Assembly (NCBI GenBank): GCA_048772705.1
Contig: JBLWGC010000082.1
Location: 62,001 to 126,000 of the forward strand
Length of the DNA: 64,000 nt
Source of the DNA: Leidyana gryllorum EB-2025a
Lineage: Eukaryota; Protista; Apicomplexa
Reading direction: 5' to 3'
Part shown: positions 1-19,200 of the stretch, one piece after another
Layout: each line of letters begins with the position of its first letter
Position numbering within the stretch: position 1 is the stretch's first letter
Program-made: the position numbers and the translations under genes
Notes under the pieces: generated by a model
What the model saw: only the letters and a program-made list of their open reading frames with translations
The model's database searches: none
What the model was told of the DNA's origin: nothing

Positions 1-35
1 GGAGCACCGGGACAGAAATGGTCCCGGCGAAGACA

Positions 36-415: not shown

Positions 416-2620
416 TCACAACTTCTCGAAGCTCACGGCAAAACCGCCACCCGATGCAACCCACTGAAGAAACTCGGAGCCTTTGGTGACGACCATCTCG
501 CGGATGTCATAGGCATGAGGGTTAGTCCAGTAGTGCGCAGTTGGAGCATCGTAGTAAATTCTGGCCCGGTAGTAGGCGTCTTCCAGGAAGTTGAGACTGA
601 ATCGGGCGAAGCGAGGATTCATTCCATTGACACTGCCCATGTACCAGTTGTCCGAGTACTTGTCGCGTCTGGCAATGGTGACAAAGGAACCGGGCTCAGC
701 TTCTATATACCGAGATTGTTGCCACTCAACGGGAACTTCCTTGATAAAATCGAATCCTCGTCCAATATGGCGAGCATAGTTGTCGGGCGTGTCAGCTGCC
801 ATTTGAAGTGGTGTGTACATTGTGACATAGAGCGCTAATTGGTTGGCAATAGTGGTATTGGCTTTGGCAATACTCGGCTGCGACGGGTCTTCGTTATCCA
901 CCCACGTGAAAATATCCATGTTCATCAGGCCGGGGGTGTAATCCATGGGACCACCGATTTGTCTGGTGAAGGGGAGAATAGTCGTGTGATGGGGGTGATT
1001 GCCGCCAGCAAAGGCGTGATATTCTGTTCCTCGGGCTGACTCTTGAGCGAGCAGGTTGGGGTAAGTACGGGAGAGACCAGTGGGTCTGACGGCCTCGTGG
1101 GCGTTCACAGAAATATTGTACTTTATGGCCTCAGTGACACAGTAGAGATAGTGGTTCACCATGTCCTGACTGTAGTGGTGATGCCCGTAAGGGAGCATAT
1201 TGCCCACATATCCACTCTTCACACTGTTGTAGCCGTGGTCGACCATGAACTGATAGGCGCGGTGGAGGTGACGCTCGTAGTTGCGAGTAGAAGACGAAGT
1301 CTCGTGGTGCATCATCATCTTGATGTTATGGTCCTTGGCATACTGCTGGATCTCTTCTACATCAAAGTCAGGATAAGGCGTCAAGAAGTCAAAGACATAA
1401 TCTTTCATCAGATTCGCCCACTCTTCCCAACCAACGTTCCATCCTTCAACCAACAATGCATCGAATCCGTGTTCAGAGGCGAAATCGATATATCTCTTCA
1501 CGCGGCTTGTCTCCGCGCCATGACGTCCGTGAGGCTTCGCCTTGTCAAAATCGGTAACGCCGAGTTGAACACTGCCATCAAAGTCAGAGGTAAAATCCCA
1601 TCTCTTGTCGTTGGCAATCATCTCGAACCAGACTCCCATATACTTGATGGGTTTGACCCATTCCTCCCACTTGAGGTCGGGGTCAGCGGGCTCGTTGAGA
1701 TTGTAAGTAATACGACTCGCCAGGATATCGGCACCGCTGCGACCGGCGATAATGGTACGCCAGGGGGTCACATTCGGCGCTTGAAGATGAGCTTTGACTC
1801 CGACTGAGTCGGGGGTGAGATGAGACTCGAAGATCATATTCTCATCGTCCAGCCACAGATGCATACAAGAGTAGTTCACCAAGGCCGCCTCGTGGATGTT
1901 GATGTAAATGCCATCGTCCGTCTTCAATTGCAACGCAGTCTGCGTCGATGGAGCGCCTATTGGGGTGGTCGAGGAGTTCTCATCCAGGGCGTCGTCATAC
2001 AGATAACGAATGTACGACATACGAGAGGCCACATAGTTGAACTCTTGGGTATCGTAGTCCCCAGGTATCCACCAAGCGTGGTGGTCTCCCGTCATAGCAA
2101 ATTCTGTGCGTTCTTCCTTGACGTGGTAATAGATCAGATTGGGCTGAGCCGGGAACTCGTAGCGGAACCCGAGACCGTCATCGAAGAGACGGAACCGAAT
2201 GTTCATCTTCCGACTCCGCTCATCATCCTGCACCAGACGAACGAGGAGTTCGTTGTGATGGTCGATGATCGCATCCTCCTCGCCCCAATACGGATACCAG
2301 ACCTCGTCGTGGTCATCGAATGTCGCAAACCCCTCGGCTTCATTCGGCTTGAAGTTGTCATATAAGGAGTCCGTAGGAGCTGCGGGATTGCTGAAGTCTC
2401 TGTCGGCGAAGAGCTCTAATCCCATTCCACTTTTCAGTACTATGGGGTCCTCCCCAAGCCACAGCTCATAAGTTGGACGCCCGGTCTCACTCAATGAGAA
2501 GACCATCCTCATGGCCTCGGAGGGAGAATACATCTCAATCACCGACTCATCATCCCCGTTTTGGGCGTAGCCCAGACCCACCGTGTGGGCCACAAAAAGT
2601 AAAGTTGCAATACGTGTCAT
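416..2620 (-). CDS. Glycoside hydrolase family 97 (SusB-like inverting alpha-glucosidase/glucoamylase), secreted; copy 1
   Basis: 734-aa intronless ORF with N-terminal signal peptide. GH97 motifs RLFDDGLGFRYEFP, WIPGDYDTQE, HEAALVNY, LVEGWNVGW, MMHHETS, KSGYVG, NAHEAVRPTG, QESARGTEY, GGPMDYTPG, PLQMAAD. Confidence 0.95.
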   Translation of the reverse strand: MTRIATLLFVAHTVGLGYAQNGDDESVIEMYSPSEAMRMVFSLSETGRPTYELWLGEDPIVLKSGMGLELFADRDFSNPAAPTDSLYDNFKPNEAEGFATFDDHDEVWYPYWGEEDAIIDHHNELLVRLVQDDERSRKMNIRFRLFDDGLGFRYEFPAQPNLIYYHVKEERTEFAMTGDHHAWWIPGDYDTQEFNYVASRMSYIRYLYDDALDENSSTTPIGAPSTQTALQLKTDDGIYINIHEAALVNYSCMHLWLDDENMIFESHLTPDSVGVKAHLQAPNVTPWRTIIAGRSGADILASRITYNLNEPADPDLKWEEWVKPIKYMGVWFEMIANDKRWDFTSDFDGSVQLGVTDFDKAKPHGRHGAETSRVKRYIDFASEHGFDALLVEGWNVGWEEWANLMKDYVFDFLTPYPDFDVEEIQQYAKDHNIKMMMHHETSSSTRNYERHLHRAYQFMVDHGYNSVKSGYVGNMLPYGHHHYSQDMVNHYLYCVTEAIKYNISVNAHEAVRPTGLSRTYPNLLAQESARGTEYHAFAGGNHPHHTTILPFTRQIGGPMDYTPGLMNMDIFTWVDNEDPSQPSIAKANTTIANQLALYVTMYTPLQMAADTPDNYARHIGRGFDFIKEVPVEWQQSRYIEAEPGSFVTIARRDKYSDNWYMGSVNGMNPRFARFSLNFLEDAYYRARIYYDAPTAHYWTNPHAYDIREMVVTKGSEFLQWVASGGGFAVSFEKL

Positions 2621-2942
2621 ACCCCCCTGAAAATTGGATTTGTGAGAATCGTGGGGATCGCCGGTGTGCGGCGTCTCAGTTGTGACACTCTCAAAGATTG
2701 ATCGTCTATCGACGCGTTCAGCTCAAAAATGAGAAAAGATCTGCTGTTAATTCGGGCTCACTTGACAAAAAACTCAGAGTTATTCAGCACTCAATATGCC
2801 GAGCAGAAAATAACAATTCAAGTAAACGCAGCGTAGAAGTGTCGCCGGGATTCGAAAATAGTGTAGCGAGAGAGAGAGGAAAAAAAGTTGATGATGTCTC
2901 TGACCGACCGATCAATCAGTCAGGCGTGTCTCGCGACTGAGA

Positions 2943-5120
2943 TCAGGCCTTCACCTTGTTGAAGCTGACAGCAAATCCACCGCCTGAAGCCACCCACTGA
3001 AGCAACTCTGAATCCTTGGTGACAACTTGCTCCCGGATGTCATAGGCGTGGGGATTGGTAGCGTAGTGGGCGGTGGGCGTGTCGTAATAAATCTTGGCGT
3101 GGTAATAAAATCCCTCATCGAGGAAATCGAGACTTATTCGGCAGTACCGGGGATCTTCGTTCGCTATGCTTCCGAGATACCAACTGTCCGAATGCTTGTC
3201 GAGTCGAGCGATAGTGAGGTAGGAACCCGGCTCGGCTTCGATATAGACCGACCGTTCCCAGTCCACAGGTACCTCTTTGATAAAATTGAAACCGCGTCCC
3301 ACGTGAGGTTGATAGTTGAAATAAGTGTCGGCAGCCATTTGCAGGGGACTGTACATAGTGACATAGAGGGCCAATTGTTTGGCAATGGTCGACTTGATCT
3401 TTTGCTGGTTGTTGGCCTGGGGGTTGACCCAAGATCCAAGATCGACGTTCATTATCCCAGGTGTATAGTCCATCGGGCCTCCAATCTGACGAGTGAAGGG
3501 GAGAATAGTCAGATGGTGAGGGTGATTGTCAGTGTACTCCTGGCCACGAGCAGACTCTTGAGCAATGAGGTTGGGGTAAGTACGGGACAGACCAGTGGGT
3601 CTGACGGCCTCGTGGGCGTTCACAGAAATATTGTACTTTATTGCCTCTTTGATACAGTAGAGATAGTGGTTCACCATGTCCTGACTGTAGTGGTGGTTGC
3701 CGTGGGGAAGCATATTGCCCACATATCCACTCTTCACACTCTTGTAGCCGTGGTCGACCATGAACTCATAGGCGCGGTGGAGGTGACGCTCGTAGTTGCG
3801 AGTGGAACCGGAGCTTTCGTGGTGCATCATGAGCTCAATGTTCTTCTCCTTTGCATATTGAACCAGTTCCTCCAGCTTGAAGTCAGGGTAAGGCGTAACA
3901 AAGTCGAACACATAATCCTTCCAGTTACCGAACCAGTCTTCCCAGCCTACGTTCCATCCCTCTATAAGCAGAGCGTCGAAGCCGTGTTCGGCAGCAAAGT
4001 CCAAATAGGCAATCACATTCTTGGTCTCCGCACCGTGGTTGTTATGAGGCTCGACATTGTCATATTGGGTGACTCCCAGCTGCACTCCAGCAATATCGAA
4101 CGTGTAATCCCACCGGGAGTGACCAACAATCATCTCCCACCAGACTCCCATAAACTTGATGGGTTTGACCCATTCCTCCCACTTGAGGTCGGGGTCAGCG
4201 GGCTCGTTGAGGTTGTAAGTGATACGACTCGCCAGGATATCGGCACCGCTGCGACCGGCGATAATGGTACGCCAGGGGGTCACATTCGGCGCTTGAAGAT
4301 GAGCTTTGACGCCCACAGCGTCGGGGGTGAGATGAGACTCGAAGATCATATTCTCATCGTCCAGGTCGAGATGCATACAAGAGTAGTTCACCAAGGCCGC
4401 CTCGTGGATGTTGATGTAAATGCCATCGTCAGTTTTCATCTGAAGGGCAGTCTGCACACCCGTCTTGGAGAAAGGGTAAAACGACGCGTTGTCCTCGACA
4501 GCATTATCGTGCAGATAGCGAATATACGACAGGCGAGACGCGGTATACTGCCATTCCTGAGTGTCGTAGTCACCCGGAATCCACCAGGCACGATGGTCTC
4601 CGGTCAGGGCGAACTGAGTGCGTTCTTCCTTGACGTGGTAATAGATCAGATTGGGCTGAGCCGGGAACTCGTAGCGGAACCCGAGACCGTCATCGAAGAG
4701 ACGGAACCGAATGTTCATCTTCCGAGCTCGCTCATCTTTCTGTACCAGCCGAACCAGGAGCTCGTTATGGTAGTCCCGGATCTCTGATTCTTCACCCCAG
4801 TAGGGCTTCCACGTCTCATCGTGCTGCCTCCTCTCAGTCGCCGGGCCGTCAGCCGTATTGTACTCAAAGTTGTCGAACAGCGAGTCAGTTGGAGCGTCAG
4901 AGTTGGCGAAATCGCGGTCTCCAAACAACTCCAATCCCATACCACTCGGCAGAATGACTGGATCTGTACCGAGATCCAACGAATATGTAGGCCTTCCCGT
5001 CTCGCTGATCTCAAAGGTCATCGTCATCGTCCCCGCAGGGGACTGCAGAGTCTCCAGAGCATCGGCAGTCCAGCATTGCCAAACAAAAACTCCTATCAAT
5101 CCACCAGAAAAGCGTCTCAT
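2943..5120 (-). CDS. Glycoside hydrolase family 97 (inverting type), secreted; copy 2
   Basis: Same GH97 motifs (HHESS, KSGYVG, NAHEA, QESARGQEY). Start placed at the ATG of MRRFSGGLIGVFVWQCWTADA (signal peptide), not the non-ATG ORF-track start at 5159. Confidence 0.95.
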   Translation of the reverse strand: MRRFSGGLIGVFVWQCWTADALETLQSPAGTMTMTFEISETGRPTYSLDLGTDPVILPSGMGLELFGDRDFANSDAPTDSLFDNFEYNTADGPATERRQHDETWKPYWGEESEIRDYHNELLVRLVQKDERARKMNIRFRLFDDGLGFRYEFPAQPNLIYYHVKEERTQFALTGDHRAWWIPGDYDTQEWQYTASRLSYIRYLHDNAVEDNASFYPFSKTGVQTALQMKTDDGIYINIHEAALVNYSCMHLDLDDENMIFESHLTPDAVGVKAHLQAPNVTPWRTIIAGRSGADILASRITYNLNEPADPDLKWEEWVKPIKFMGVWWEMIVGHSRWDYTFDIAGVQLGVTQYDNVEPHNNHGAETKNVIAYLDFAAEHGFDALLIEGWNVGWEDWFGNWKDYVFDFVTPYPDFKLEELVQYAKEKNIELMMHHESSGSTRNYERHLHRAYEFMVDHGYKSVKSGYVGNMLPHGNHHYSQDMVNHYLYCIKEAIKYNISVNAHEAVRPTGLSRTYPNLIAQESARGQEYTDNHPHHLTILPFTRQIGGPMDYTPGIMNVDLGSWVNPQANNQQKIKSTIAKQLALYVTMYSPLQMAADTYFNYQPHVGRGFNFIKEVPVDWERSVYIEAEPGSYLTIARLDKHSDSWYLGSIANEDPRYCRISLDFLDEGFYYHAKIYYDTPTAHYATNPHAYDIREQVVTKDSELLQWVASGGGFAVSFNKVKA

Positions 5121-5527
5121 CAGAAATTGCACAAGACCGCTCCGACAGGGGGAGCGCACTGTGTGCGGTGTCTCCAGCTGCTACACGGAGACTGGCATGG
5201 ACAATTCTACCTGCCTTTGTCGCGTTTCCAAAACACGCCGGTAGGGTACCGTAAGAAGTGTTAGATGGTGGAAGAACATAGTCTGGAATCAATTTTCAGT
5301 TAGTTTTGAGGTCAATTGCAGTACATCACAAAAACTTGACTGCTTACAAAGGTTATATGTATAGAGCGCGGACTTTGGAACCAGAACCCTTTCGTTGCCG
5401 CGATTACTCGGTCGATCGATCACTGCATCCCAGTTGATCGCAGTCAAACAATCAGAAGGGCGTATAAAAAACTGATCGAATCAATATCTTGAGCGAAAGC
5501 TCTTAAGCCATTCGGTGTGTGTTAGAG

Positions 5528-7753
5528 TTAGCTTCTCTCAATCTTCTTGAAGCTGGCAGCGAAACCACCACCAGAGGCAGTCCATTGGAGGAACTCAGAT
5601 CCCTTGGTGACCACAACCTCGCGAATGTCATAAGCATGCGGGTTAGTCCAATAGTGGGCACCCGGGAGATCGTAGTAAATTTTGGCCAGGTAGAACTCTC
5701 CCTCGGTCAAGAAATCGAGGTTGAGACGCACGTACCTTGGTTCCAAGGAGTTCACATTGCCCATGAACCAGTTGTCGCTGTTCTTGTCGAGTCTGGCGAT
5801 GGTGACATACGAGCCCGGCTCAGCCTCAAGGTACACCGAGCGCTTCCAGTCCACCGGGACGTCTTTGATGAAGGTGAAGGCACGGTCCACATGAGGCTGG
5901 TAGTTTTCCACGGTGTCAGCGGCCATTTGCAGGGGACTATACATTGTGACATAGAGTCCGAGCTGGTTGGCGATGGTGGAGTTGACTTTGGCTTCGAGGT
6001 CCACGTCGTCCTCGTGACGAGTGCTCGGGTCCTTGTCGATCCACTCGAAAATGTCCATGTTGAACACACCTGGCGTGTAATCCATGGGGCCACCGAGTTG
6101 ACGGGTGAAGGGAAGGATAGTGACATGGTGGGGGTGATTGCCGTTCTCGAAAGCCTGGTACTCCTGGCCACGAGCAGATTCTTGCGCGAGCAGGTTGGGG
6201 TAAGTACGGGAGAGACCAGTGGGTCTGACGGCCTCGTGGGCGTTCACAGAAATATTGTATTTGACGGCCTCCTGGACACAGTAAAGATAGTGGTTCACCA
6301 TGTCCTGACTGTAGTGGTGGTTGCCGTGGGGAAGCATATTGCCCACATATCCACTCTTCACACTCTTGTAGCCGTGTTCGACCATGAACTCATAGGCGCG
6401 GTGGAGGTGACGCTCGTAGTTGCGAGTGGAACCGGAGGTCTCATGGTGCATCATCAACTTGATGCCCAGCTCTTGGGCGAGATCGGTCAGATGTTCCAGC
6501 TTAAAGTCCGGGTACGGCGTGACGAAATCGAACACGTACTCCTTCCAGTTGCCGAACCAATCCTCCCATCCCTCATTCCAGCCTTCGACAAGAAGAGCAT
6601 CGAAGCCGTGCTCGGCAGCGAAGCGGAGGTACTTCTCCACGTTGTCAGTAGTGGCGCCATGAATGTTGTGGGGCGTGAGCTCGGCATAATTAGTTTCGCC
6701 GAGCTTGACACTTTCCACGTCACGAGTGTAATCCCATCTGCGGTGGTCAGTGATCATTTCCCACCAGACTCCCATGTACTTGACAGGCTTGACCCACTCT
6801 TCCCATTTAACTGACGGGTCAGCCGGTTCGTTGAGGTTGTAAGTGATGCGACTGGCGAGGATGTCGGTTGCTTTGCGGCCAGCAATGACGGTTCTCCACG
6901 GGGTTACGTTGGGCGCTTGGAGGTGAGCCTTGACGCCAACGGCATCAGGAGTGAGGTGCGACTCAAAAATCATGTTGGTGTCGTCAACAGTGAGATGCAT
7001 ACAGGAGTAGTTGACAAGAGCGGCCTCGTGAATATTGATGTAGATACCCTCATCGGTCTTCAATTGGAGTGCAGTTTGGACTCCAGTAGGACCGAAGGGG
7101 TATGCTGCGACGTTCTCCTCGAGAGCATCGTAGTACAGGTGACGGATATAAGACATACGGGAAGACTGGTAGTTCCACTCCTGAGTATCGTAGTCACCCG
7201 GGATCCACCAAACATGATGATCTCCGGTCATAGCGAATTGGGTGCGTTCTTCCTTGACGTGGTAATAGATCAGATTGGGCTGAGCCGGGAACTCGTAGCG
7301 GAACCCGAGACCTTCATCAAAGAGTCGGAACCGAATGTTCATCTTCCGACTCCGCTCATCATCCTGCACCAGACGAACGAGGAGTTCGTTGTGATAGTCG
7401 CGAATCTCGTCTTCTTCACCCCAGTAGGGCTTCCACGTCTCATCGTGCTCCCTCCTCTCCGTTGCCGCACCCTCAGCAGTGTTCAAGACAAAGTTGTCGT
7501 AAAGCGAATCACTTGGGGCGTCAGAGTTGGCAAAGTCCCTGTCTCCAAATAGCTCCAAACCCATACCACTGGGCAGAATAACTGGATCCTCTCCCAAAAA
7601 TAGCGAGTAGGTGGGGCGTCCAGTATCCGAGAGATCGAATGTAAGCGTCATCGCCCCCTCTGGAGACGTCAAAGTTAGAGGGAGAGATGTTTGTTGGCCA
7701 TTGGCTGATTGCCACGAGAGAAGCCCGAACACTTGGAGTGAGAACCACTTCAT
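5528..7753 (-). CDS. Glycoside hydrolase family 97 (inverting type), secreted; copy 3
   Basis: 741 aa with signal peptide. LVEGWNEGWEDW, HHETSG, KSGYVG, NAHEA and QESARGQEY are all intact. Confidence 0.95.
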   Translation of the reverse strand: MKWFSLQVFGLLSWQSANGQQTSLPLTLTSPEGAMTLTFDLSDTGRPTYSLFLGEDPVILPSGMGLELFGDRDFANSDAPSDSLYDNFVLNTAEGAATERREHDETWKPYWGEEDEIRDYHNELLVRLVQDDERSRKMNIRFRLFDEGLGFRYEFPAQPNLIYYHVKEERTQFAMTGDHHVWWIPGDYDTQEWNYQSSRMSYIRHLYYDALEENVAAYPFGPTGVQTALQLKTDEGIYINIHEAALVNYSCMHLTVDDTNMIFESHLTPDAVGVKAHLQAPNVTPWRTVIAGRKATDILASRITYNLNEPADPSVKWEEWVKPVKYMGVWWEMITDHRRWDYTRDVESVKLGETNYAELTPHNIHGATTDNVEKYLRFAAEHGFDALLVEGWNEGWEDWFGNWKEYVFDFVTPYPDFKLEHLTDLAQELGIKLMMHHETSGSTRNYERHLHRAYEFMVEHGYKSVKSGYVGNMLPHGNHHYSQDMVNHYLYCVQEAVKYNISVNAHEAVRPTGLSRTYPNLLAQESARGQEYQAFENGNHPHHVTILPFTRQLGGPMDYTPGVFNMDIFEWIDKDPSTRHEDDVDLEAKVNSTIANQLGLYVTMYSPLQMAADTVENYQPHVDRAFTFIKDVPVDWKRSVYLEAEPGSYVTIARLDKNSDNWFMGNVNSLEPRYVRLNLDFLTEGEFYLAKIYYDLPGAHYWTNPHAYDIREVVVTKGSEFLQWTASGGGFAASFKKIERS

Positions 7754-7887
7754 GTTAGTGACTGAGAGCGAGTGATAATATCTATCTTCTTACCAACCTC
7801 GGACAGTCCACAATGTGCGACCCAACCCAAAGTCCCATGGAGACGCACACGGCTGCAAACACTATAAAACTAACACCTAAATAGATT

Positions 7888-7990
7888 ACGACGACGACGA
7901 CGACGACGACAAAAGGGGGGAAGCAGAGAAACAGAAGGAGGGTGGCGAAGTGAGTGAGTGTGAGTGAGTCAGAGGGTCAGAGTGAGAAAG
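7888..7990. repeat. (GAC)n microsatellite followed by a (GAGT)n-like tract
   Basis: acgacgacgacgacgacgac, then gtgagtgagtgtgagtgagt, upstream of GH97 copy 3. Confidence 0.7.
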
Positions 7991-8358
7991 AAAGTACAAC
8001 GTTGGCGGTAGAATGTATGGATCACAAAAGTGCCGTCTCCCGTCAGTGGCAGTGTTCGAGCTGTGGGTATCGGTGTGTTCGTGCATCTCTCTGCGCAATC
8101 GATGACAAGAGAATGGTCTGACAAGTCCATTGGGATTATTGCGGATGTTTGTTGTGTTTTTGTCACGGGTGGTGCCAGAAATCAGACAACGGAACTACAG
8201 AATCTAACTAAAAAGTGTCTCAAGTGAGGGTGGAAAGATGAGATCTCGTTGTGGGCGATTGCAGGAAGCATGGATTGGTCGGTCGACCCGTCGCATGACC
8301 AATCCATGATAGTGATAATGTGCGTTTGGCCCTCGGCGGCGACCGACCAATCAGTCTC

Positions 8359-10485
8359 TCAACAGCCTTTGTGATGGGAATGTCTGACGAGATGACAGAA
8401 GAAGCCTCCGTTTTCGGCCGTGACTATCGTTATGCGGTCTTTGCGGCGCACAGTGGTGGTGTTCTGAGTGTAAGATTCTGGATTGGTGGTATCAGTGAGA
8501 TCTGAATCGCTAAATATTGTGGCAATATAGTCGGAATTCCTGTCCAGGAAGTTGAGTGAGAAATCAACAACGCGGCGTTTTGTCGATGAAATCCCGGCAA
8601 TGAACCAGTCGCCTCGCTTGTTCGGGACTTTTCGAGCAACCGTGACGTACTGACCAATTTCTGCTTCCAAATACAAAGTGCGAGACCAGCGGGTCGGTAG
8701 GGCCTCTATGGTCGCAAGCAGAGGAGTGTGTGCCAATAAATTATCGGGAGTGTCAGCGACGAGCTGATTCGGAGAGTAAAGTACCACCAGGAGCGCGACT
8801 TGTTTGATTAACGATCCAAGTTGAGGGGCAAATGATAGACCATTAAGTCTGACAATGCCACCGCCGTATTCAACGGGTGCACCGATTAAATGGTTCCAGG
8901 GAAGAACAGTCGCGTGTGAATGTTTCGATTGACTATAAGTTGCTGAAAAATCGCCGTTGGTTTGGCCCAGAGTCGCGGAGAACAAATTTGGGTATCTCCT
9001 CGACAGACCTGTTGGCTTCAAGCCCACTTTAAAGGAGATTGCGAGTCTATTTTGGAGAGCTTCCTCAATGAGAGTGCGATAGTGAGCATTGGTGCGTTGG
9101 CTTCCGCGGTAAGCGCCGTTGCCCAGTTGGTGGGCGCCTTGATACTCGATCTTCACCGCCTTGTACTGATTGAGTTCGACGGTGCGCCTCAGCGCTGCGG
9201 ACGCTTTCCGACTGTACTCAGTGATGGCAGTACCAACTTGATAGTGGCGAATGAGTGATATGTTGCGATCCGCGGCGAACGATACAATCTGCTCCTCGTC
9301 AATGTCGGGGTACGGCTGGATAAAGTCGAACAGCACGTTCTTGTCGTCGCTAAGCCGCCAACTCTCCCAGCCTTCATTCCAGCCTTCGAAACTTACGGCG
9401 TCGAACCCGTGACGAGCAGCAAAATCAATATAAGTCATTATTCGCTCAGTGGTGGCTCCATGGCGATGATTGGGAGTCATCTCACCATAATCAGTGACGC
9501 CTATTTCTACCGGATCGTCCGTATAATGCCATGTCTTTTGACCAATCACCATTTCCCACCACACACCAACAGATTTGAGGGGCTGAATCCAAGTGGCATC
9601 GGCCACAACAGACTCTTCATTCAGATTATAGATCATATGACTCGTCAAGATGGCAGCGGGATCTCGCGTTACCATAACACTGCGCCACGGAGTAGTCACA
9701 GGACCGCTCAACACTCCGCTTGTAGTCGCACCGGCGTTGTCACGAGTTAAGTGTGCAGCAAAAGTCTGTGAGGCCGCGTCATATCTCAAATTCATGGAGG
9801 GGAAGATGTCGCCCCCAGCCTCATGAATGTTTATGTAAACCCCGTCTGCGCTCCTCATCGTGATAGGCGTACGTACAACAGAGTCGCTCTTCTCTACTTC
9901 GAGGAGCACAGACGATATAGCACTCAAATCAGACTCTATAAAAGTGTAATCATCCTTGGTGGCCGGAGCCCACCAAGCCCGATGGTCGCCTCGTACTCTG
10001 AATTCAGTCCGCTCGGCCAATATTGGTTCTTCAAACAGTGTCTCCTGCTCTGGAAACTCCATGTTGAAGGCAATGCCAATATCATAGGCTCGTAAATTTA
10101 TCAATACTTGCCGACGGATCGGACGACTTTGAGTGGCCCGGATGGTCAACTGGTTGTAGTGATCTTCAACAACACTCTGCTCACCCCAAACCGGGCGCCA
10201 TTCTTCTCGTGGCATAGAGTAGAACGGAATCATTCCAGACATCACCCAACCGTCGTACAGTGAACTCTCCGGGTACCCGCCTGTCGCTAACTCGAATCCA
10301 ATGCGACTGAATGGTATAACTATCTCAGAACCCAACCTCACTTGATAACTGATCACACCGTCGTCGTCAATCTTCAGAGTACCAGTAACATTCTCGTTCG
10401 GTGAAGGCATATCGTACATCACCGCACCTCTCACCACTGTAAGGCACAACAACAACAGTAATAGCAGATTATGCCCATTATACAT
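8359..10485 (-). CDS. Divergent GH97-family protein with remodelled active site; copy 4
   Basis: 708 aa with Leu-rich signal peptide. GH97 scaffold motifs (RAYDIGIAF, INIHEAG, TPWRSV, VWWEM, EGWNEGW, KPTGLSRRYPN, LEAEIGQYVTVARK) are present, but the catalytic Glu motifs are replaced. Confidence 0.88.
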   Translation of the reverse strand: MYNGHNLLLLLLLCLTVVRGAVMYDMPSPNENVTGTLKIDDDGVISYQVRLGSEIVIPFSRIGFELATGGYPESSLYDGWVMSGMIPFYSMPREEWRPVWGEQSVVEDHYNQLTIRATQSRPIRRQVLINLRAYDIGIAFNMEFPEQETLFEEPILAERTEFRVRGDHRAWWAPATKDDYTFIESDLSAISSVLLEVEKSDSVVRTPITMRSADGVYINIHEAGGDIFPSMNLRYDAASQTFAAHLTRDNAGATTSGVLSGPVTTPWRSVMVTRDPAAILTSHMIYNLNEESVVADATWIQPLKSVGVWWEMVIGQKTWHYTDDPVEIGVTDYGEMTPNHRHGATTERIMTYIDFAARHGFDAVSFEGWNEGWESWRLSDDKNVLFDFIQPYPDIDEEQIVSFAADRNISLIRHYQVGTAITEYSRKASAALRRTVELNQYKAVKIEYQGAHQLGNGAYRGSQRTNAHYRTLIEEALQNRLAISFKVGLKPTGLSRRYPNLFSATLGQTNGDFSATYSQSKHSHATVLPWNHLIGAPVEYGGGIVRLNGLSFAPQLGSLIKQVALLVVLYSPNQLVADTPDNLLAHTPLLATIEALPTRWSRTLYLEAEIGQYVTVARKVPNKRGDWFIAGISSTKRRVVDFSLNFLDRNSDYIATIFSDSDLTDTTNPESYTQNTTTVRRKDRITIVTAENGGFFCHLVRHSHHKGC

Positions 10486-11850
10486 CTTCCAAGTCTAGAG
10501 CAGTTGAGAGAGGTAGGGGCAGATCGACAAAAAAGTCAAACCAACTGTCCACTTGGCAATGGAAGCGCAACACTCAACGTGCCAACCATTCCATTCACCG
10601 AAATGGTGTCCCAACGCGTCACCGCACACAACGTCACTACGGAGACGCGGAGAGCTCAAGAGAGGCCCCACAGAGAAGTAAGACAGAGCACAGAGATATT
10701 TGAGCTATCGAATGTACCCCAACCTTGTCTGCATGTGGACCAATGTTGATGGGTGTACAGTGAGGGTGTGATGACGTGTATGAGTAATCAAATGCGATGC
10801 GTGTTCAACGAACTTGCGGGCGCGCGCCGCGCTTCTGTGTGTGCAGACAGCACACGCAACCCTTGTGTCGCACATTGCGCTTCGAGTTGGCTTGAGAGCA
10901 TCTGGCGTTCTGGTGTTCAGCAGCTCTTGCTCAGTGACTTGAAGAGGAGACACACACACACGCACACACAACTTTGATATTGTAAATGCACACACTACAC
11001 TTGAAATGACAGTGCTCTTGCACGTGGCCCAATTGTTGGTCATTGTCAGGGGGGTTTGACACAATCAATCTATCAACTTGGAGGAAGAGTGTAGGTAATC
11101 GACCGGATGTACTGTTGTTAAATTGTGTGATACGAACGAATGTAATGATATGAATGTCTGTCTCTCTGCCTTTGACGACAGCAGATCTTCTTCCTTCTTC
11201 CCTTTTGGCGGGGTAGATGTGCATGTGTGTGTATGTCGATGGACTAGCTTTGTGGACTCGCGTCTGTTCTTATGACTGCGTTAGTAAGCGGGAAGAGATT
11301 GAGAGGCTCGGCTGTCATCGAGTCTCGCAGTCGTCACACGTGGGAGAGGTTTTGAATGAGAATCAGAAGGAAGTGATCAGGAGGAGTATAGGGTGACATG
11401 CGGCGAACAAACGGCGGCGGCAAGAGGGCTGACCACCGACACCGTTAAGTCAGTGCAACGCACGGCCAACACCGATCCGAAAAGTTGATTCGGATGGAAA
11501 AATGTCATTGTCAGGAGTGTGGGAATAGTAAATTGAGCGGCGAATGAGAAGTAGAAAGAGCAGTGTGAACGGAAGATGAGCATAAGCGGGAATCGCGTAC
11601 GAAAGCCAGAGACAAAAAGGCGACAGAGAATCGCTCTCAGTCCCACAAAGATTCAGTAAGGGGCCGCCAAGCGCTCACAAGATACAACAGGCAGAAAGCG
11701 ATCAGATGTTGTAGTATTGGTACACAAGAGCGTACTATATCAGATTGTTAAGTGTCGATTCGATCGATTATGTATAGAGAAAGAAATAAGAACTCGCGCG
11801 GGATTTGAATGCAAGAAACAAAGAGCGTATGTGTGAGGCGAGTATCCGAG

Positions 11851-11890
11851 GGAGTGAGTGAGTGAATGAATGAGTGAGTGAGTGAGTGAA
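11851..11890. repeat. (GAGT/GAAT)n tetranucleotide microsatellite
   Basis: gagtgagtgagtgaatgaatgagtgagtgagtgagtgaa. Confidence 0.75.
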
Positions 11891-12536
11891 TGTGTCATTT
11901 CACGCTTTAAACTAGCCCTATCCGGGCTCAACACCCCTGGCCGAGAGCGGAGCTTGTGTCATTGTCTTGAGAAATTATAATTGGAAGGAAACCGATGGCG
12001 ACTTCCAGCGCGCATCATTCCGTCCAACTCAAGTATAATCTGATCATCAAGCGTATCAAAATTGGGTTGTGTGTGTTTGGTAAGTGTGTGCAATCGATAG
12101 ATCGGTGGGTGATTTTGTCAGTTTGAGGAGCACGAGAAGCGTCAATTGCATAAATCACGCGGTGAGGGTCCACAGAAGCACCATAAAACGGCGGGCGACA
12201 CACGGAATGCAAAATGTTGTCCCCTCGTTGGCGGGGGTATGCGACTGGCCGGCCATGTAACAGTAGTCGCCCCCCATGAGGTTCACAAGAGCGTGTGAAC
12301 GCTTGAGAGAGGATATCAGAATAGCATATCAACAGCAGCAATATTAAATCGGACAATGGAAGATTTAAAGCAACTGGTATTGAGCTTACTTCGCGGTGAT
12401 GTAAAAATCGAGAACGAAAAACAGTAAGTAGTGGGCCTAATGGGCTCTCCTACGGATGGCAGCTTTGGGGCATCGCGTACTCGGAGAGGAGATTCTGCAA
12501 GAGGAGAGACAATGGAGTGTGAGGGGAGCGAGCGGA

Positions 12537-15002
12537 TTACTTGGTGATTTTAGCTGCGTAGCCGCCACCGGGTGCGATATGGACTCGCGTAACTGAATCG
12601 GACTTGATGACCTGACTGATAGTGTTGTATGCTGTTGGATTGTCAAGGTAGTGCGCGTTTGGGGTGTCATAGTAGGCAGTGGCTTGATAGTATTGTTGGT
12701 TGTCGAGAAACTGGTAGGTTAATTCGAAGTCGTAGCCGTTTGGGCCGGCAATGGCTCCTACATACCAATCGTCTGTTTGCTTGTCTTTGCGGGCAACGAC
12801 GATGTGAGAGCCAGGTTCAGCTTGCAGGTGTAAGGTACGCTCCCAGGCCACAGGTACATCTTTTATGAACTGGAATGCCCGTGATTTGTGTCGCGCGTAG
12901 TTTTCGGGTAAGTCGGCTGCCATTTGCAGTGGACTATAGAGGACAACGTAGAGAGCAAGTTGGTACGCGATAGTGGATCCGTTATGTTGATTGGAAGCGT
13001 GCAGAAGACCAGGAGCGAAGTCTATGGGTCCACCAATACCGTGTGTGAATGGCAATATGGTGGCCTGGCTGGGGTCGGGTCCGCCGTTCGTGCTAGCTGG
13101 TGTAGCGGCCAATAGATGCGGAAAGGTTCGTGACAATCCGGTGGGCTTGAGTGCGTTGTGCACGTTGAGATGAATATTATACGGGATAGCAGCCTTAAGA
13201 GCATACAAATAGTGATCAATCATATACTGTGAGAGTCTGTAGGGCGAGTTTGGACTCATGTTGGGATAGTAGTCAGTCTTGACGACTGACGATCCGTGTT
13301 TGCGCATGAATTGGTATGCTCGGTGTAGTTGGCGTTCGTAGTAGGAGACAGCAGCTGCAGGATGATGTAGCATCAGTTGAACGCCTCGCCGCGCCGCGTG
13401 CTGACTGAGAGCATCGATGTCAAAGTCAGGGTAAGGAGTCGTAAGGTCAAAGATGTCTCCGGCTGCAGGTCCGCTGCGGCCAAAGTTCTCCCATCCGACA
13501 TTCCAACCCTCCGTTAGCACTGCGTCGAAGCCATTCTCGGCTGCAAACTCAATGTACTCCCGAACGCGTTCGGTGGTTGCGCCGTGTCTTCCATGCGGGT
13601 GGACTAACGAGTAATTGGTGGACCCCAAGCGTACAAATTCGTCGGTGTAGTCCCACCGACGTTGACCAATCATCAACTCCCACCAAATGCCCACATACTT
13701 CATAGGCCGAACCCATTCCGTACTTTTAAGCGCACAGGGCTCATTCAATGCGTAGATCAGTCGACTTCCCAGAATCTCGCGAGCATCTCGAGTAATCATA
13801 ACTGTGCGCCATGGAGATTTTCCCCCTTTTCGAACAATCGCCGCTGGCGCGCCAGCAGCAACACTCGTACTTTTTATGGTCCCAGTCGTCGTTGTAGTCG
13901 CGATTGCAGCGCCGCCTGTCCCCACTCGCCCTCCGCTGGGGGTCAAGTGTGCTGCCAAAGTGTAAACGGTGGATTCCAGGTGGCTGGCAGCAGCCGAGGA
14001 GGCGAGATATGTGTTAGAACTCGTCGTCATCGTTGGCCATTGGGTGCTTCTTGGGGCGCCAAGAAGAAGGGTGCTCTTGTGTTCAGTAAAAGAAGAAGCT
14101 TTTTCATCGAGGAATCGATCACTCGAAGCGCGGACGTTCTCGTCGGCGTTGGCGTCGCGGTTGTAGTCCTCTTCGTGGTCGGAGGTGAAGTCTGGTGTAG
14201 CAGTATAGGGGTGGCGCAGTCTCGAGATCTCATCAGTGTCAGAAGTGTAGCTGTCACCACGTATTGCAGCGGCGTGGGACCCACCCGTGGGTGGGACCAC
14301 CCGCAGGTGCATTGCCGGAAAGTTAACCAATGAGGCCTCGTGGATGTTAATGTAGAGACCTCGACTCGTCTTCATTTGAATCGGGGTCTGGACGCGCGCT
14401 ACTGTGGCATCGTCATAATGATAGGGATTCGCTTCTGCTGGCGTCTTCAACCTGATTTCACTTAACGGAGACCCGTGGAACTTCTGATGGACGGCATCAT
14501 AGTCTCCGTTCGTCCACCAACCAAAGTGATCATCGAGAACACGGAACTCCGTCTTCTCGTCAGCTATCCGCGCAGAGTTCTCAAACTCATAACGGAAAGC
14601 CACACCTATGTCGTAGGCTCGGAAACGCAAACCCAGTCTCTCCTCGCTTCCCGCAGCCTCAAGTCGCACATACAACTCATTGTACTCCAAGGATATTCGT
14701 CCAGTCTCTTCTCCCAACACAGAGTCCCATTCATCCTTGGACTTGTCCAATGACGACACCGTCATTGTATCCCATTCCCACAAAGCTGAGCCCTCTGTCA
14801 TCTCAAAGCCCAAAGCACTCGTGCCAATCGCAAGTTCGTCCTCGTACCACACTTCATAACGCAAAACACTATCAGCAAACAGCCCGATTACACCCGTGAT
14901 CGATCCATCCACCGACTTAACTTCGACACGCGATCGCCAAGCCTCATCAGAGCCGAAAGCGATAGCAGTGTACACCAAGCCCCACACGCATACCCAACGC
15001 AT
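12537..15002 (-). CDS. Divergent GH97-family protein with low-complexity insertions and remodelled active site; copy 5
   Basis: 821 aa with signal peptide. FRAYDIGVAFRYEF, INIHEASLVN, SPWRTV, KYVGIWWE, TEGWNVGWE, TTPYPDFD, GGPIDFAPG, PLQMAADLPENY. Catalytic Glu motifs are replaced. Confidence 0.9.
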   Translation of the reverse strand: MRWVCVWGLVYTAIAFGSDEAWRSRVEVKSVDGSITGVIGLFADSVLRYEVWYEDELAIGTSALGFEMTEGSALWEWDTMTVSSLDKSKDEWDSVLGEETGRISLEYNELYVRLEAAGSEERLGLRFRAYDIGVAFRYEFENSARIADEKTEFRVLDDHFGWWTNGDYDAVHQKFHGSPLSEIRLKTPAEANPYHYDDATVARVQTPIQMKTSRGLYINIHEASLVNFPAMHLRVVPPTGGSHAAAIRGDSYTSDTDEISRLRHPYTATPDFTSDHEEDYNRDANADENVRASSDRFLDEKASSFTEHKSTLLLGAPRSTQWPTMTTSSNTYLASSAAASHLESTVYTLAAHLTPSGGRVGTGGAAIATTTTTGTIKSTSVAAGAPAAIVRKGGKSPWRTVMITRDAREILGSRLIYALNEPCALKSTEWVRPMKYVGIWWELMIGQRRWDYTDEFVRLGSTNYSLVHPHGRHGATTERVREYIEFAAENGFDAVLTEGWNVGWENFGRSGPAAGDIFDLTTPYPDFDIDALSQHAARRGVQLMLHHPAAAVSYYERQLHRAYQFMRKHGSSVVKTDYYPNMSPNSPYRLSQYMIDHYLYALKAAIPYNIHLNVHNALKPTGLSRTFPHLLAATPASTNGGPDPSQATILPFTHGIGGPIDFAPGLLHASNQHNGSTIAYQLALYVVLYSPLQMAADLPENYARHKSRAFQFIKDVPVAWERTLHLQAEPGSHIVVARKDKQTDDWYVGAIAGPNGYDFELTYQFLDNQQYYQATAYYDTPNAHYLDNPTAYNTISQVIKSDSVTRVHIAPGGGYAAKITK

Positions 15003-16201: not shown

Positions 16202-19200
16202 ATGACTGGTGTTCTCCTGCCCCCAATCAGGACCCTTCTGGGGTTCTTGGAGGAACAAAGCGAGTCTCATGACCTTCAAGTCTTTGCTCTCCGAAACCTC
16301 AATGAAGTTGCCCACCAAGCCTGGTTCGAGATTGCCGAGAAACTGCCCGCTTTGTGAGCGACACAATGTGTCACACTTCCTTTCATCCACAATTCAGAGA
16401 ACTGAGTCTTGAGAATGGTCAAGTCAAACCGGGGTGCGCTGCTCTCACAGCCTTATTACTCTCGCAAACTCATTACCATTTGGAACAATACGGACACGCT
16501 ATGCGATATGCCCTCCGAGCGAACGAGGAGTTCCTGCGTCTTTTTGATGCCTTCTACAAGACCTCATCACCCAATACCACCAACCCACATATCAAACAAT
16601 TCGTTGACATTATTGTCGGTAAGCCGCCAAGACATCCCACTGCCTCTCACCAATCACTCTGCAGGCAAAGTCTTGGAACGTTTCATAGAGAACAGTGTGT
16701 CCGAGACCATAGACGAGCAACAAGAAGCTGTCCAGACTTTCGTCTGGCGTGTGATCGATTTGCCCCCAGTCGCGACCACCCAATGGCCCGCGATCCCTAT
16801 TGCGGCTCTCAAACCCTTGTTAGGTGTCACTCTGGATGCCTGTACTATAGATTTGACCGAAAGAGTCTTGAGATGGAGTCTGGGGACCGGATCTTTCGAG
16901 TTGGTGCGCTACGTCGTCGTTAACAATACCCTCCTGATATCCACCAAACACATACGGACTCAGGTCTTCAAGTTGGTGGCGGATCTCTACAAAGAGCAAT
17001 TCCAGCCCCTCTGTGTCTTCGCATCACCAAGTCCGGACACACAAGCGCCAGAAATCAGCGAGAGTCTCTATCAAGAGCTGCCCACTTACATTGAGGTCCT
17101 CGCCACCCTGGAGGATGTCGAGTCTGTGGCAACCATCCTGAGAGCGCTAATTGGCGTCTCGGTGGAGCGAAATAAGGTACGCTCGCAAACCAAAGACAAC
17201 GAGATTTCTCGCTGCAGGAAACCCCGTATCTCATGGCGTTGCAACTGGCATTCGACATCACAGGTCTAGGTGAGTCGCAATTGCCGCCCCTCCGCCTTTC
17301 TACTCTTCTTGCTCCCGACAGGCAACCAGTCGTTCCTCAATGATCTCAAGGGACATCACTGTTTGGTGGCGGCTGAAAGCCCTGAAGCCAAGTTGGAGAT
17401 GGGTGAACATACCGGAAAGGTGGAGGAGCCTGGTGAGGTGAAAAAGGTGGACGAGCCATCGGCTCCTGTTGCAGAGAAAGTGAGTGATCCCGAAAACGGT
17501 CAAATCTTGTGCCAGTTGAGAGCACTCAACCGCGTGTTGATGGGCAACTACGAGTATTCTATCACCCTCAAGTTTGCTCACCTCCGCAACGGCACCGATA
17601 AGGAACTTCTGGAACACATCAAGGTGAGTCAATTCAAACATTCGGGACGCAGACGGAACACTGAAATTGCTGTCTTTCCTTCTATCAGACCGGCCTCGAC
17701 AATAAACACTATGTGCTACACACGTCTCTCATCGTCGCACACGGTCTGATGCTTCGCGGCACCACCCACGACGGCTTCCTTCGGAAGAACCTGGAGTGGT
17801 TTGGCCGCTCGTTGTGTTGGGGCAAGTTCACAGCTACCGCGTCTCTGGGTGTTGTCCATCAGGTAAGAGGCTGTTTTCGCACTACCAAGCTCAACTCTTA
17901 ACCCATCGCCAGACACACACTGAAAAATCGTTCCGTGTGCTGAGCACATATCTGCCAGGCTGTACAGGTTCCTCGTCTGGGGGAGGCAGTAGCTCATCAT
18001 CGACATTCTCTGATGGCGGATCCTTGTACGCTATGGGTTTGATCCATGCGAATCGAGGCGACCCCAATGTTATTAGCTATCTGTTGGGTCAATTGAGTAT
18101 TGGAAGTGGCGTTGTTGGCGGTCAAATGGAGGGCCAAACTGCTGCAGGTAGTTCCACTGTGAATGAAATCAGTCAACACGGCGCCTCATTGGGTCTTGGA
18201 CTGGTTGCAATGGGGACACATGCCCTGCCGTTGTACGAGGCTCTGAAGAGCGTACTGTTAATGGACTCTGCGGTTTCGGGAGAAGCAGCTGCTCTCGGCA
18301 TTGGTCTGATAATGATGGGATCTGGTCGGGATGAAGTTATAGATGAGCTGTATCAATATGCAAAAGACACACGACACGAAAAGATCGTCCGCGCGTGTGC
18401 TCTGGCCATCGCGTTTGTTTGTTATGGCCGAGAGGAGTATACTGCCGAAGTGGTTCAGAAGCTTTTGGATTCTTCAGACCCGTTGATCCGTTATGGCGGT
18501 TGCTTTGCCCTGGGTCTGTCGTGGTGTGGCTCCGGTCGTGAGGCCACTCTTCGCCATCTCTTGCACCTGGCTGTATCAGATGCGTCTAATGACGTTCGTC
18601 GGGCAGCAATTCTGGCCATTTCGTACGTCGTCTGTAACCTTCCGGGGCAGACGCCACGAGTTCTCAAACTCTTGACGGACAGTTTCAATTTCCACGTTCG
18701 ATTTGCGGCCGCTCTTGCGATTGGTATAAGTTGCGCTGGAACCGCTTCCAAGGAGGCGCTGGCAGCCTTGGTGCCGGCGACTCGCGACGCTACTGACGTT
18801 GTGCGACAAGCGGCGTATATCGGGCTGGGATTGGTACTGATGGAGTGTTCCGACCAGAAGATGGAGGAAATGAGTAAAAGGGAGAAGGAAAGAGAGGCTG
18901 CAAGCCCGCTATCGACCGCGGCAACCACCAAATCAGCCACTGAGAAGAAGGAGCACACCACAGAGCGGTCACGAAAGAACGCAAAGAGCGCAGCTGAGAA
19001 CGAATTACCACTATATCCCACTCCGACCCAAGTTCGTGAGCACTTTGTTGGAGTCGCAACGGACAGGCGGGAAGATGTGATGGCCCGTGTCGGAGCTTTG
19101 ATTGGACTCGGGCTTTTGGACGCCGGTGGACGGAATGTGACAACAAGTTTCTACTCGGCCCGAGGTGTTCTGCGGAAAGAGGCTGTTGCCGGTTTCTGTT

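What the first reader, a model, noticed from the sequence alone, without database searches (positions are those of the whole stretch)
416..15002. Five-gene tandem array of secreted bacterial-type GH97 (SusB-like) glycosidases in a eukaryotic chromosome
Seen: five co-oriented, intronless GH97 ORFs, each with a different signal peptide, physically contiguous with spliced eukaryotic genes (RPN2 etc.). Established: GH97 (Bacteroides SusB) is predominantly a bacterial, especially Bacteroidetes, family. Inference: a horizontally acquired gene was expanded into a secreted alpha-glucan-scavenging system, plausibly in a gut-dwelling protist. Deep divergence of copies 4 and 5 implies long residence rather than contamination.
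Basis: partly seen in the sequence, partly recalled or inferred. Interest (0 to 1): 0.85.

Follow-up and report, generated by a model that had tools for sequence, protein, structure and literature searches.

The report
Bacterial GH97 gene family in a gregarine
An insect-gut parasite related to the malaria agent carries five neighbouring copies (plus a sixth elsewhere) of a starch-sugar-cutting enzyme gene taken long ago from Bacteroidota gut-type bacteria; three copies still look like working enzymes, and three have lost every catalytic residue yet are still conserved (one is seen transcribed in close relatives).

Summary
Five co-oriented, full-length GH97 genes lie at exactly the stated coordinates on a 292-kb contig of a 15.5-Mb eugregarine genome. 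They are flanked by eukaryotic genes whose introns I saw spliced out in cDNA contigs of close relatives.

In trees, all five plus a sixth copy on another contig form one clade nested inside SusB-type Bacteroidota enzymes. This fits one old transfer followed by duplication. Contamination is excluded:
- GC3 and codon use are host-like.
- Copy 5 is transcribed in relatives, with two GT..AG introns at its 3' end.
- dN/dS among copies 1-3 is 0.11-0.16.

- The array is not uniformly intronless, because copy 5 has 3' introns.
- It is not five glucosidases. Copies 1-3 keep every SusB catalytic and calcium-binding glutamate and show patchy gene conversion. Copies 4 and 5 (and copy 6) have lost E439, E508, E526 and E532, which 301 of 309 bacterial homologues keep. 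They still keep the fold and sugar-contact residues, and their divergence patterns fit purifying selection. They are probably non-catalytic glycan binders, or else mechanistically new.

Other first readers of this scan noted parts of this on the same DNA. I found no paper on GH97 in apicomplexans.

The parts
416..2620 (-). GH97 copy 1 (734 aa), SusB-type, all catalytic and Ca residues kept
   Evidence: Pfam, three domains. phmmer alignment to SusB chains at 832 bits; I estimate about 57% identity by eye, in line with the 56-58% of the best bacterial hits. E194, E439, E508, E526 and E532 all present.
2943..5120 (-). GH97 copy 2 (725 aa from the first ATG; the ORF runs up to 5159)
   Evidence: The motif is HHES in place of HHET; the glutamate is kept.
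5528..7753 (-). GH97 copy 3 (741 aa), catalytic set intact
   Evidence: It is 73-77% identical to copies 1 and 2. Tracts of 91-98% nucleotide identity stand against a 60-70% background.
8359..10485 (-). GH97 copy 4 (708 aa), fold intact, catalytic and Ca glutamates lost
   Evidence: E194 to D, E439 to Q, H507/E508 to K/V, E526 to T, no E532, and G469 to E. AF2 model pLDDT 89.7; TM 0.91/0.95 to GH97 structure 8wg1.
12541..15002 (-). GH97 copy 5, exon 1 (820 codons plus 2 bases); catalytic and Ca glutamates lost; two low-complexity inserts (about 63 and 67 alignment columns) in the N-domain
   Evidence: E194 to H, E439 lost (HHP), E508 to N, E526 to T, no E532, G469 to D. cDNA contigs of relatives cover 12541-15071.
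12495..12540 (-). Copy 5, intron 1 (46 nt, GT..AG). It starts at the last base of the last sense codon and removes the stop at 12537-12539.
   Evidence: Skip seen in contigs of runs X1 and X2; sequence.
12390..12494 (-). Copy 5, exon 2. It adds 18 codons and then TAG at 12437-12439; the rest is 3' UTR. It has no differences from the contigs of either relative.
   Evidence: table 8 (0 other letters in 105 in X1 and X2); junction read by eye.
12040..12389 (-). Copy 5, intron 2 (350 nt, GT..AG) in the 3' UTR
   Evidence: Skip seen in one X2 contig only, with a 36-nt side; GT..AG confirmed. Weaker than intron 1.
16409..19589 (+). RPN2 proteasome subunit gene; the flanking eukaryotic gene with confirmed short introns
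   Evidence: Pfam PC_rep, RPN2_C and RPN2_N. GT..AG skips at 16354-16397, 16618-16663, 17175-17215, 17480-17515, 17622-17686 and 17860-17909 in cDNA contigs.

Best explanation
An ancestor of this eugregarine (an insect-gut apicomplexan) took up one SusB-type GH97 alpha-glucosidase gene from a Bacteroidota bacterium. The gene became a eukaryotic gene: it gained a eukaryotic-looking signal peptide and host codon use, and at least copy 5 gained spliceosomal introns at its 3' end. It then multiplied by tandem duplication into the five-gene array; a sixth copy moved to another contig.

The family split into two lineages. Copies 1-3 keep the complete calcium-dependent inverting machinery. They are kept partly alike by gene conversion. 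They most likely enter the secretory pathway and release glucose from malto- and isomalto-oligosaccharides or dextrins in the host gut lumen, or in a digestive compartment of the parasite (inferred, not shown).

Copies 4, 5 and 6 lost the base glutamates, the acid glutamate and the calcium site once, in their common ancestor. They keep the GH97 fold and the sugar-contacting residues W331, E391 and K467. Their divergence patterns fit purifying selection, and copy 5 is transcribed in relatives. I therefore read them as secreted non-catalytic glycan-binding proteins (pseudoenzymes). That last step is inference.
For: Domains and coordinates.

Host identity: the best named hits of the DDX10-like gene are Blabericola migrator at 53%, Gregarina sp. 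Poly at 56% and G. niphandrodes at 47%.

Donor: the best database hits to copy 1 are Bacteroidota GH97 at 56-58% identity, and one of them sits in a Sus-type locus. In careful LG+C20 trees the six copies form one clade, with support 99/97 and 97/95. That clade sits inside a 100/100 clade of named Bacteroidota. In the AU test, the tree that holds the six together is 32.8 lnL better than the free quick tree, p 0.86.

Integration: the contig is 292 kb with even GC. GH97 GC3 is 0.53-0.66 against 0.50-0.65 for host genes and 0.86 for a bacterial SusB. The flanks are eukaryotic. cDNA contigs of two related organisms, at 93-97% nucleotide identity, cover copy 5 with GT..AG introns removed.

Selection: dN/dS among copies 1-3 is 0.11-0.16. 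Of 40 listed differences between copy 5 and its relative, 31 fall at third codon positions and none at second positions (my count, table 3).

Active sites: read against Gloster 2008 (PMC2670981).

Fold of copy 4.
Against: A single origin rests on joining long branches. When copy 5, or copies 4 and 6, are left out, the remaining long branch still sits next to copies 1-3, but support falls to 78 and 54. The first quick tree separated the two groups.

Transcription and splicing were seen only for copy 5, and only in relatives, not in this strain.

Signal peptides are judged by a heuristic only. No enzymatic, binding or localisation data exist. Whether other gregarines carry GH97 could not be tested.
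Confidence: 0.75

Rival explanations
1. There were two or more acquisitions. Copies 1-3 and copies 4-6 came from different Bacteroidota donors, or arrived together on one transferred fragment that already carried two GH97 paralogues.
For: The quick 40-row tree placed copies 4-6 outside the crown group that holds copies 1-3. With one long branch removed, support for joining the groups drops to 54-78. Bacteroidota genomes often hold several GH97 genes (Naumoff 2005, PMC1249566).
Against: The careful trees join all six with support 97-99. The AU test prefers the joined tree. No bacterial sequence among 1.84 billion representatives shares the loss pattern of copies 4-6 or scores closer than ordinary SusB-type enzymes. 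The genes lie in tandem in one orientation.
Confidence: 0.15
2. Copies 4 and 5 (and copy 6) are still hydrolases or transglycosidases with a rewired, calcium-independent mechanism. For example, they might use the Asp (copy 5) or Glu (copy 4) that now sits at the retaining-nucleophile position, G469 of SusB.
For: Copy 5 reads KTDY and copy 4 reads KIEY where retaining GH97 enzymes have (K/M)(I/V)DF. The sugar-contact residues are kept. The genes appear to be under purifying selection.
Against: E526 and E532 are kept by the retaining enzymes too, and by 301 of 309 homologues, but are gone in these copies. Copy 6 has Gly at the nucleophile position. The former acid loop is the only low-confidence stretch inside the copy 4 domains.
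Confidence: 0.15
3. The array is bacterial contamination or an assembly chimera.
For: High similarity to Bacteroidota genes and uninterrupted coding bodies. The same pattern was judged to be contamination for the Anopheles GH97 fragments (PMC1249566).
Against: Identity to any bacterium is only 56-58%. Codon use and GC3 are host-like. Signal peptides look eukaryotic. Copy 5 cDNA is spliced at GT..AG sites in two related organisms. Eukaryotic genes lie on both sides on a 292-kb contig. No SusC or SusD neighbours were found.
Confidence: 0.02
4. GH97 was inherited vertically in a broad eukaryotic clade and is not a transfer.
For: GH97 transcripts are reported from some anaerobic gut fungi (10.1101/487215), so eukaryotic GH97 genes exist.
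Against: All named close hits and all Atlas clusters are Bacteroidota. The clade is nested within them. No eukaryotic source appeared among the listed hits.
Confidence: 0.03

Closest known systems
SusB / BtGH97a of Bacteroides thetaiotaomicron (inverting, Ca-dependent alpha-glucosidase; PDB 2JKA, 2D73, 2ZQ0)
   Same: Copies 1-3 have the same three-domain architecture and align at 832 bits (about 57% identity by my estimate). They keep E194, E439 (HHET), K(T/S)GY, E508 (HE), E526 and E532.
   Different: The genes are eukaryotic, with eukaryotic-type signal peptides in place of a bacterial or lipoprotein leader. They are not part of a SusC/D locus. They form a tandem family shaped by gene conversion. 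Copies 4-6 lack the whole catalytic and calcium set.
Flavobacterium johnsoniae GH97 glucodextranase (PDB 8WG0-8WG2)
   Same: It is the best sequence match (462 bits) and the best structural match (TM 0.91/0.95) of copy 4.
   Different: The bacterial enzyme keeps all the catalytic glutamates. Copy 4 has Q, V and T at, and no residue aligned to, the corresponding positions.
BtGH97b / BT1871, retaining alpha-galactosidase (PDB 3A24, 5E1Q)
   Same: Copy 5 has Asp, and copy 4 has Glu, at the position of the retaining nucleophile.
   Different: Sequence scores are low (about 100 bits) and TM is 0.77. There is no HG motif in copies 4 and 5, and no E526 or E532. In trees these copies sit in the SusB-type clade, not the retaining one.
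Bacterial glycosidase genes acquired by gut eukaryotes (for example anaerobic gut fungi, preprint 10.1101/487215)
   Same: Carbohydrate-active enzyme genes passed from gut bacteria to a gut-dwelling eukaryote and were then expanded.
   Different: Here the host lineage is an apicomplexan and the family is GH97. Half of the family has become catalytically void yet is retained.

Membership tests
GH97 (Pfam PF14508 + PF10566 + PF14509) | Three-domain architecture above the curated thresholds | tested here: met
   All five window copies and the sixth copy match all three domains nearly end to end.
GH97 (Pfam PF14508 + PF10566 + PF14509) | GH97 fold: beta-sandwich, (beta/alpha)8 barrel and C-terminal beta domain | tested here: met
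   Tested for copy 4 only. AF2 pLDDT is 89.7 and pTM 0.90. Foldseek TM is 0.90-0.95 to 8WG1, 9BS5 and 2JKA.
GH97 (Pfam PF14508 + PF10566 + PF14509) | Calcium ligands E194, E508, E526 and E532. Gloster 2008 calls E526 and E532 absolutely conserved. | tested here: not met
   Met in copies 1-3. Not met in copies 4, 5 and 6, which have D/H/D, V/N/G, T/T/T and none/none/A at these positions. 301 of 309 bacterial rows keep both E526 and E532.
GH97 inverting subfamily (SusB-like) | Motifs HHET, K(T/S)GY and HE | tested here: met
   Copies 1-3 have HHET or HHES, KSGY and AHE. Copies 4 and 5 do not: HYQ and HHP; KIEY and KTDY; KV and HN.
GH97 retaining subfamily (BtGH97b-like) | (K/M)(I/V)DF nucleophile motif, HG, and a conserved acid/base equivalent to E532 | tested here: not met
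   Copy 5 has the Asp, but within KTDY, with HN and no E532. Copy 4 has Glu. Copy 6 has HG but Gly at the nucleophile site. The trees place all of them in the SusB-type clade.
GH97 alpha-glucosidase activity | Hydrolysis of alpha-glucosidic bonds, dependent on calcium | not testable with these tools
   Needs recombinant protein and assays.
Gene of bacterial origin fixed in a eukaryote (horizontal transfer) | Nested inside a bacterial clade in a tree | tested here: met
   the clade sits inside a 100/100 Bacteroidota clade. The donor order is unresolved.
Gene of bacterial origin fixed in a eukaryote (horizontal transfer) | Physically part of the host chromosome and processed as a host gene | tested here: met
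   A 292-kb contig with eukaryotic genes on both sides, host-like GC3, and spliced copy 5 cDNA in relatives. Long-read continuity was not testable.
Gene of bacterial origin fixed in a eukaryote (horizontal transfer) | Absent from related eukaryotes outside the recipient lineage | tested here: inconclusive
   No eukaryotic source appears among the 120 best hits of copies 1 and 4 or among the ten best profile hits whose clusters I looked up. Only the top of each list is visible, and the near relatives' records are withheld.
Bacteroidota Sus-like polysaccharide utilisation locus | SusC/SusD pair next to the glycosidases | tested here: not met
   The neighbours are GH32, a PncC/CinA-domain gene, RPN2 and a phosducin-like gene. 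The bacterial hit P0001 does sit in such a locus.
Secreted protein | Cleavable N-terminal signal peptide | tested here: inconclusive
   A hydrophobic core and (-3,-1) small residues are present in all six, with no other TM-like segment. This is a heuristic only; no dedicated predictor or proteomics was available.

The most novel reading that the evidence does not exclude
Copies 4, 5 and 6 are the first GH97 pseudoenzymes. They would be a selected, secreted family that keeps the sugar pocket but not the chemistry, and that the parasite uses to bind alpha-glucans or host or gut glycans (lectin- or adhesin-like). Less likely, they use a calcium-independent mechanism not yet seen in GH97.
Probability: 0.4. 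Interest if true: 0.65.

Novelty: new variant of a known kind. Interest (0 to 1): 0.55.

Why it matters
Gregarines are the least known large branch of the Apicomplexa, and how they feed in the host gut is poorly understood. A six-member GH97 family of bacterial origin is the largest alpha-glucosidase-type family I found in this 15.5-Mb genome; by comparison there are two GH31 loci and one weak GH13 match. This suggests the parasite digests dietary starch products with borrowed bacterial tools.

The split into an active lineage and a catalytically void lineage, both retained, is a clean natural case of a transferred enzyme gene turning into a pseudoenzyme. It can be tested directly with recombinant proteins.

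It also shows how to tell true transfer from the gut-bacterial contamination that explained earlier 'eukaryotic' GH97 fragments.

Tried and rejected
1. An 86-row mixture-model tree did not finish in 450 s. A careful 40-row search was also unfinished after 576 s. I used 26- and 29-row careful trees instead. Rows left out: near-duplicates, fragments, fused proteins, and most distant or retaining representatives.
2. The quick 40-row tree split the family into two places. The AU test showed that its search had missed a better joined tree.
3. P0366 lies on a 2601-nt contig, the same length as the copy 5 cDNA contig. I suspected it was a gregarine orthologue, but it keeps HHET, HE and E532, so it is not a copy-5 orthologue. 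I did not establish its origin.
4. A metagenome scan with copy 4 returned only contigs encoding GH97 at 38% identity or less, which I take to be bacterial. Many come from human-gut samples; these are microbial contigs, not human DNA, and I did not use them further.
5. The retaining-subfamily reading of copies 4 and 5 was rejected (see the membership test).
6. The Sus-locus reading was rejected.
7. I looked for decayed GH97 pieces between the genes and found none.
8. Rfam found nothing in 1-20000.
9. The neighbouring GH32 is not shown to be bacterial. Its nearest Atlas clusters and solved structures are mostly fungal invertases and inulinases, at weak scores.
10. The spliced copy 5 model was not joined or sent to any search tool. 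I read only the junction, by eye.
Full report
**What is there**

The window is G000:C82:62001-126000, part of a 291,966-bp contig in a 15.5-Mb assembly of 237 contigs. Five long ORFs lie on the minus strand:
- copy 1: 416-2620
- copy 2: 2943-5159
- copy 3: 5528-7753
- copy 4: 8359-10485
- copy 5: 12537-15002

Each ORF matches the three GH97 Pfam domains (GH97_N, Glyco_hydro_97, GH97_C) almost end to end, with E-values from 1e-22 to 1e-90. The gaps between the ORFs are 322, 368, 605 and 2051 bp. No decayed GH97 pieces lie between them.

A whole-genome scan finds one more full-length copy on contig C220, which I call copy 6. Just downstream of copy 1, on the same strand and 333 bases outside the window, is a GH32 gene (L004:7575-9668). 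A PncC/CinA-domain gene at 15242-16015 lies head to head with copy 5.

**The host**

The neighbouring genes are eukaryotic: RPN2, a GT31 galactosyltransferase, a DDX10/DBP4-type helicase, Atg3, a metacaspase and an EF2-like GTPase. The best named hits of the helicase are Blabericola migrator (53%), Gregarina sp. Poly (56%), Gregarina niphandrodes (47%) and Porospora. The first two were isolated from cockroaches (PMC8051059). The genome is therefore that of a eugregarine, a gut parasite of insects. This agrees with earlier notes of this scan.

**It is not contamination**

- GC is even along the window.
- The GH97 genes have GC3 of 0.53-0.66, and their codon usage correlates with host genes at r = 0.45-0.76. 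The host genes themselves have GC3 of 0.50-0.65. A bacterial SusB gene has GC3 of 0.86.
- The best bacterial hits to copy 1 are only 56-58% identical.
- I laid contigs of four public runs, from two coded organisms, on 12001-18000. They match at about 93% (organism A) and 95-97% (organism B).
- These contigs lack six RPN2 introns with GT..AG ends, each 36-65 nt long. They are therefore cDNA of close relatives, whatever the run labels say.
- One 2601-nt contig covers copy 5 from 15000 down to 12390. Another reaches 15071, which is 69 nt upstream of the ATG.
- The copy 5 transcript removes 12495-12540 (46 nt, seen in two runs). One contig also removes 12040-12389 (350 nt). Both are GT..AG on the minus strand.
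- The first intron starts at the last base of the last sense codon and removes the stop codon. The spliced message adds 18 codons and ends at TAG 12437-12439. I read this junction by eye. The joined model was not sent to any search tool.

So copy 5 is processed as a eukaryotic gene, and the word 'intronless' does not hold for it. The coding bodies of all five align to bacterial enzymes without interruption.

**Origin**

All named close hits are Bacteroidota: Barnesiella, Coprobacter, Parabacteroides, Dysgonomonas, Flavobacterium, Pedobacter, Algoriphagus, Puia and others. One of the best hits lies in a classical Sus-type locus with SusC, SusD, SusE and SusG-like genes.

I ran an exhaustive profile search with copies 4, 5 and 6 against 1.84 billion representatives. 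It found nothing closer than ordinary SusB-type enzymes.

Phylogeny:
- A quick 40-row tree placed copies 1-3 inside the SusB-type crown group and copies 4-6 just outside it.
- The AU test then found that a tree holding all six together is 32.8 log-likelihood units better (p-AU 0.86).
- Careful LG+C20 trees recover the six as one clade. Support is 99/97 with 26 rows and 97/95 with 29 rows that include named species.
- This clade is nested in a fully supported Bacteroidota clade. The donor order is not resolved.
- Inside the clade there are two lineages: copies 1-3 (100/99), and copy 5 with copies 4 and 6 (99/95).
- Removing one long branch at a time keeps the topology but weakens the support to 78 and 54.

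One transfer is therefore favoured but not proven. The tandem arrangement is independent support for it.

**Age and dynamics**

Copies 1-3 are 73-77% identical in protein. Copies 4 and 6 are 62% identical. The two lineages are 35-44% identical to each other.

Among copies 1-3, dS is 1.3-1.7 and dN/dS is 0.11-0.16. Tracts of 91-98% nucleotide identity occur at codons of about 126-175, at 251-300 (copies 1 and 2 only) and at 451-500. The background is 60-70%. This is the pattern expected from gene conversion.

For copies 4 and 6, pN is 0.23 against a saturated pS of 0.76.

Of the 40 listed differences between copy 5 and its counterpart in organism A, 31 fall at third codon positions, 9 at first positions and none at second positions (my count, table 3). 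This indicates purifying selection. The low-complexity insert of copy 5 varies by indels between relatives.

**Active sites**

Gloster et al. 2008 (PMC2670981) define the following:
- the calcium ligands are E194, E508, E526 and E532;
- the base is E439, in the motif HHET;
- the acid is E532;
- inverting enzymes carry K(T/S)GY and HE;
- retaining enzymes carry (K/M)(I/V)DF and HG;
- E526 and E532 are conserved in every member.

Copies 1-3 keep all of these.

Copies 4, 5 and 6 compare as follows:

| SusB position | Copy 4 | Copy 5 | Copy 6 |
|---|---|---|---|
| E194 | D | H | D |
| E439 | Q | lost (HHP) | Q |
| E508 | V | N | G |
| E526 | T | T | T |
| E532 | none aligned | none aligned | A |

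All three share the derived pattern [S/A]-A-T ... T-N in the former acid loop. This points to one loss in their common ancestor. In my sample, 301 of 309 full-length bacterial GH97 rows keep both E526 and E532, including the retaining ones.

The three copies keep W331, E391 and K467, which contact the sugar. Copies 5 and 6 also keep H507.

At the retaining-nucleophile position (G469), copy 5 has Asp, copy 4 has Glu and copy 6 has Gly. This is not the retaining constellation.

The AF2 model of copy 4 is confident (pLDDT 89.7, pTM 0.90). It superposes on GH97 structures with TM 0.90-0.95. The only weak stretch inside the domains is residues 511-520, the former acid and calcium loop.

**Targeting**

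All six N-termini differ, and all look like signal peptides. There is no other TM-like segment and no hydrophobic tail. This rests on a heuristic only.

**Reading**

I conclude the following.
- A SusB-type gene entered a gregarine ancestor from a Bacteroidota bacterium, became a host gene and expanded in tandem.
- Copies 1-3 are most likely secreted calcium-dependent alpha-glucosidases acting on starch-derived oligosaccharides in the insect gut or in a digestive compartment.
- Copies 4-6 cannot use either known GH97 mechanism but are maintained. They are most likely non-catalytic glycan binders.

What is shown: domain content, phylogenetic position, host-like composition, transcription and splicing of copy 5 in relatives, divergence patterns that fit purifying selection, and the residue losses.

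What is inferred: secretion, substrates and the binding role.

**Comparison with the literature**

Naumoff 2005 found no genuine eukaryotic GH97 and explained the Anopheles fragments as contamination. GH97 transcripts are listed for some anaerobic gut fungi. Searches for GH97 together with Apicomplexa, and for gregarines together with glycoside hydrolases and gene transfer, returned no paper. Searching gregarines with alpha-glucosidase returned four papers; judged by their titles and abstracts, none is about a gregarine enzyme.

Transfer of a carbohydrate-active enzyme gene into a gut eukaryote is a known kind of event. The lineage, the family and the retained catalytically void branch are new.

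Other first readers of this scan noted parts of the same locus: the rewired active site, the GH32 neighbour, the gene conversion and copy 6.

Noticed in passing
window:12390-12494 (minus strand): Exon 2 of copy 5 is mostly 3' UTR. It shows 0 differences in 105 nt against cDNA contigs of both related organisms, while the coding exon beside it differs at about 3-7% of sites. It is unusually conserved; it may be a regulatory or RNA element. Rfam found nothing there.
   Followed up: partly
L004:7575-9668 (= G000:C82:59575-61668, minus strand, 333 nt before the window): A 697-aa GH32 (invertase/inulinase-type) gene lies directly downstream of GH97 copy 1 on the same strand. Together they make a six-gene glycosidase row. 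Its nearest Atlas clusters and solved structures are mostly fungal invertases at weak scores, so a bacterial origin is not shown.
   Followed up: partly
window:15242-16015 (+): A PncC/CinA-domain (NMN deamidase-type) ORF lies head to head with copy 5. A cDNA contig of a relative covers 15305-15866 at only about 85% identity, with unaligned ends on both sides.
   Followed up: partly
L003:6749-8923 (G000:C220, minus strand): A sixth GH97 copy sits on another contig. It is 62% identical to copy 4 and shows the same loss of catalytic and calcium glutamates. The neighbouring ORFs have no Pfam match.
   Followed up: partly
window:13850-14300 (copy 5): The low-complexity inserts in the N-domain of copy 5 differ by indels between relatives; for example, 66 nt are replaced by 78 nt at 14056-14121.
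   Followed up: no
window:17265-17324: One RPN2 skip in a cDNA contig has CT..GC ends and six extra letters. It is either an alignment artefact or a divergent intron/exon boundary in the relative.
   Followed up: no
window:49317-55526 (-): A 2069-aa ORF with no Pfam match, in a stretch of raised GC (0.55-0.59) and strong AT skew.
   Followed up: no
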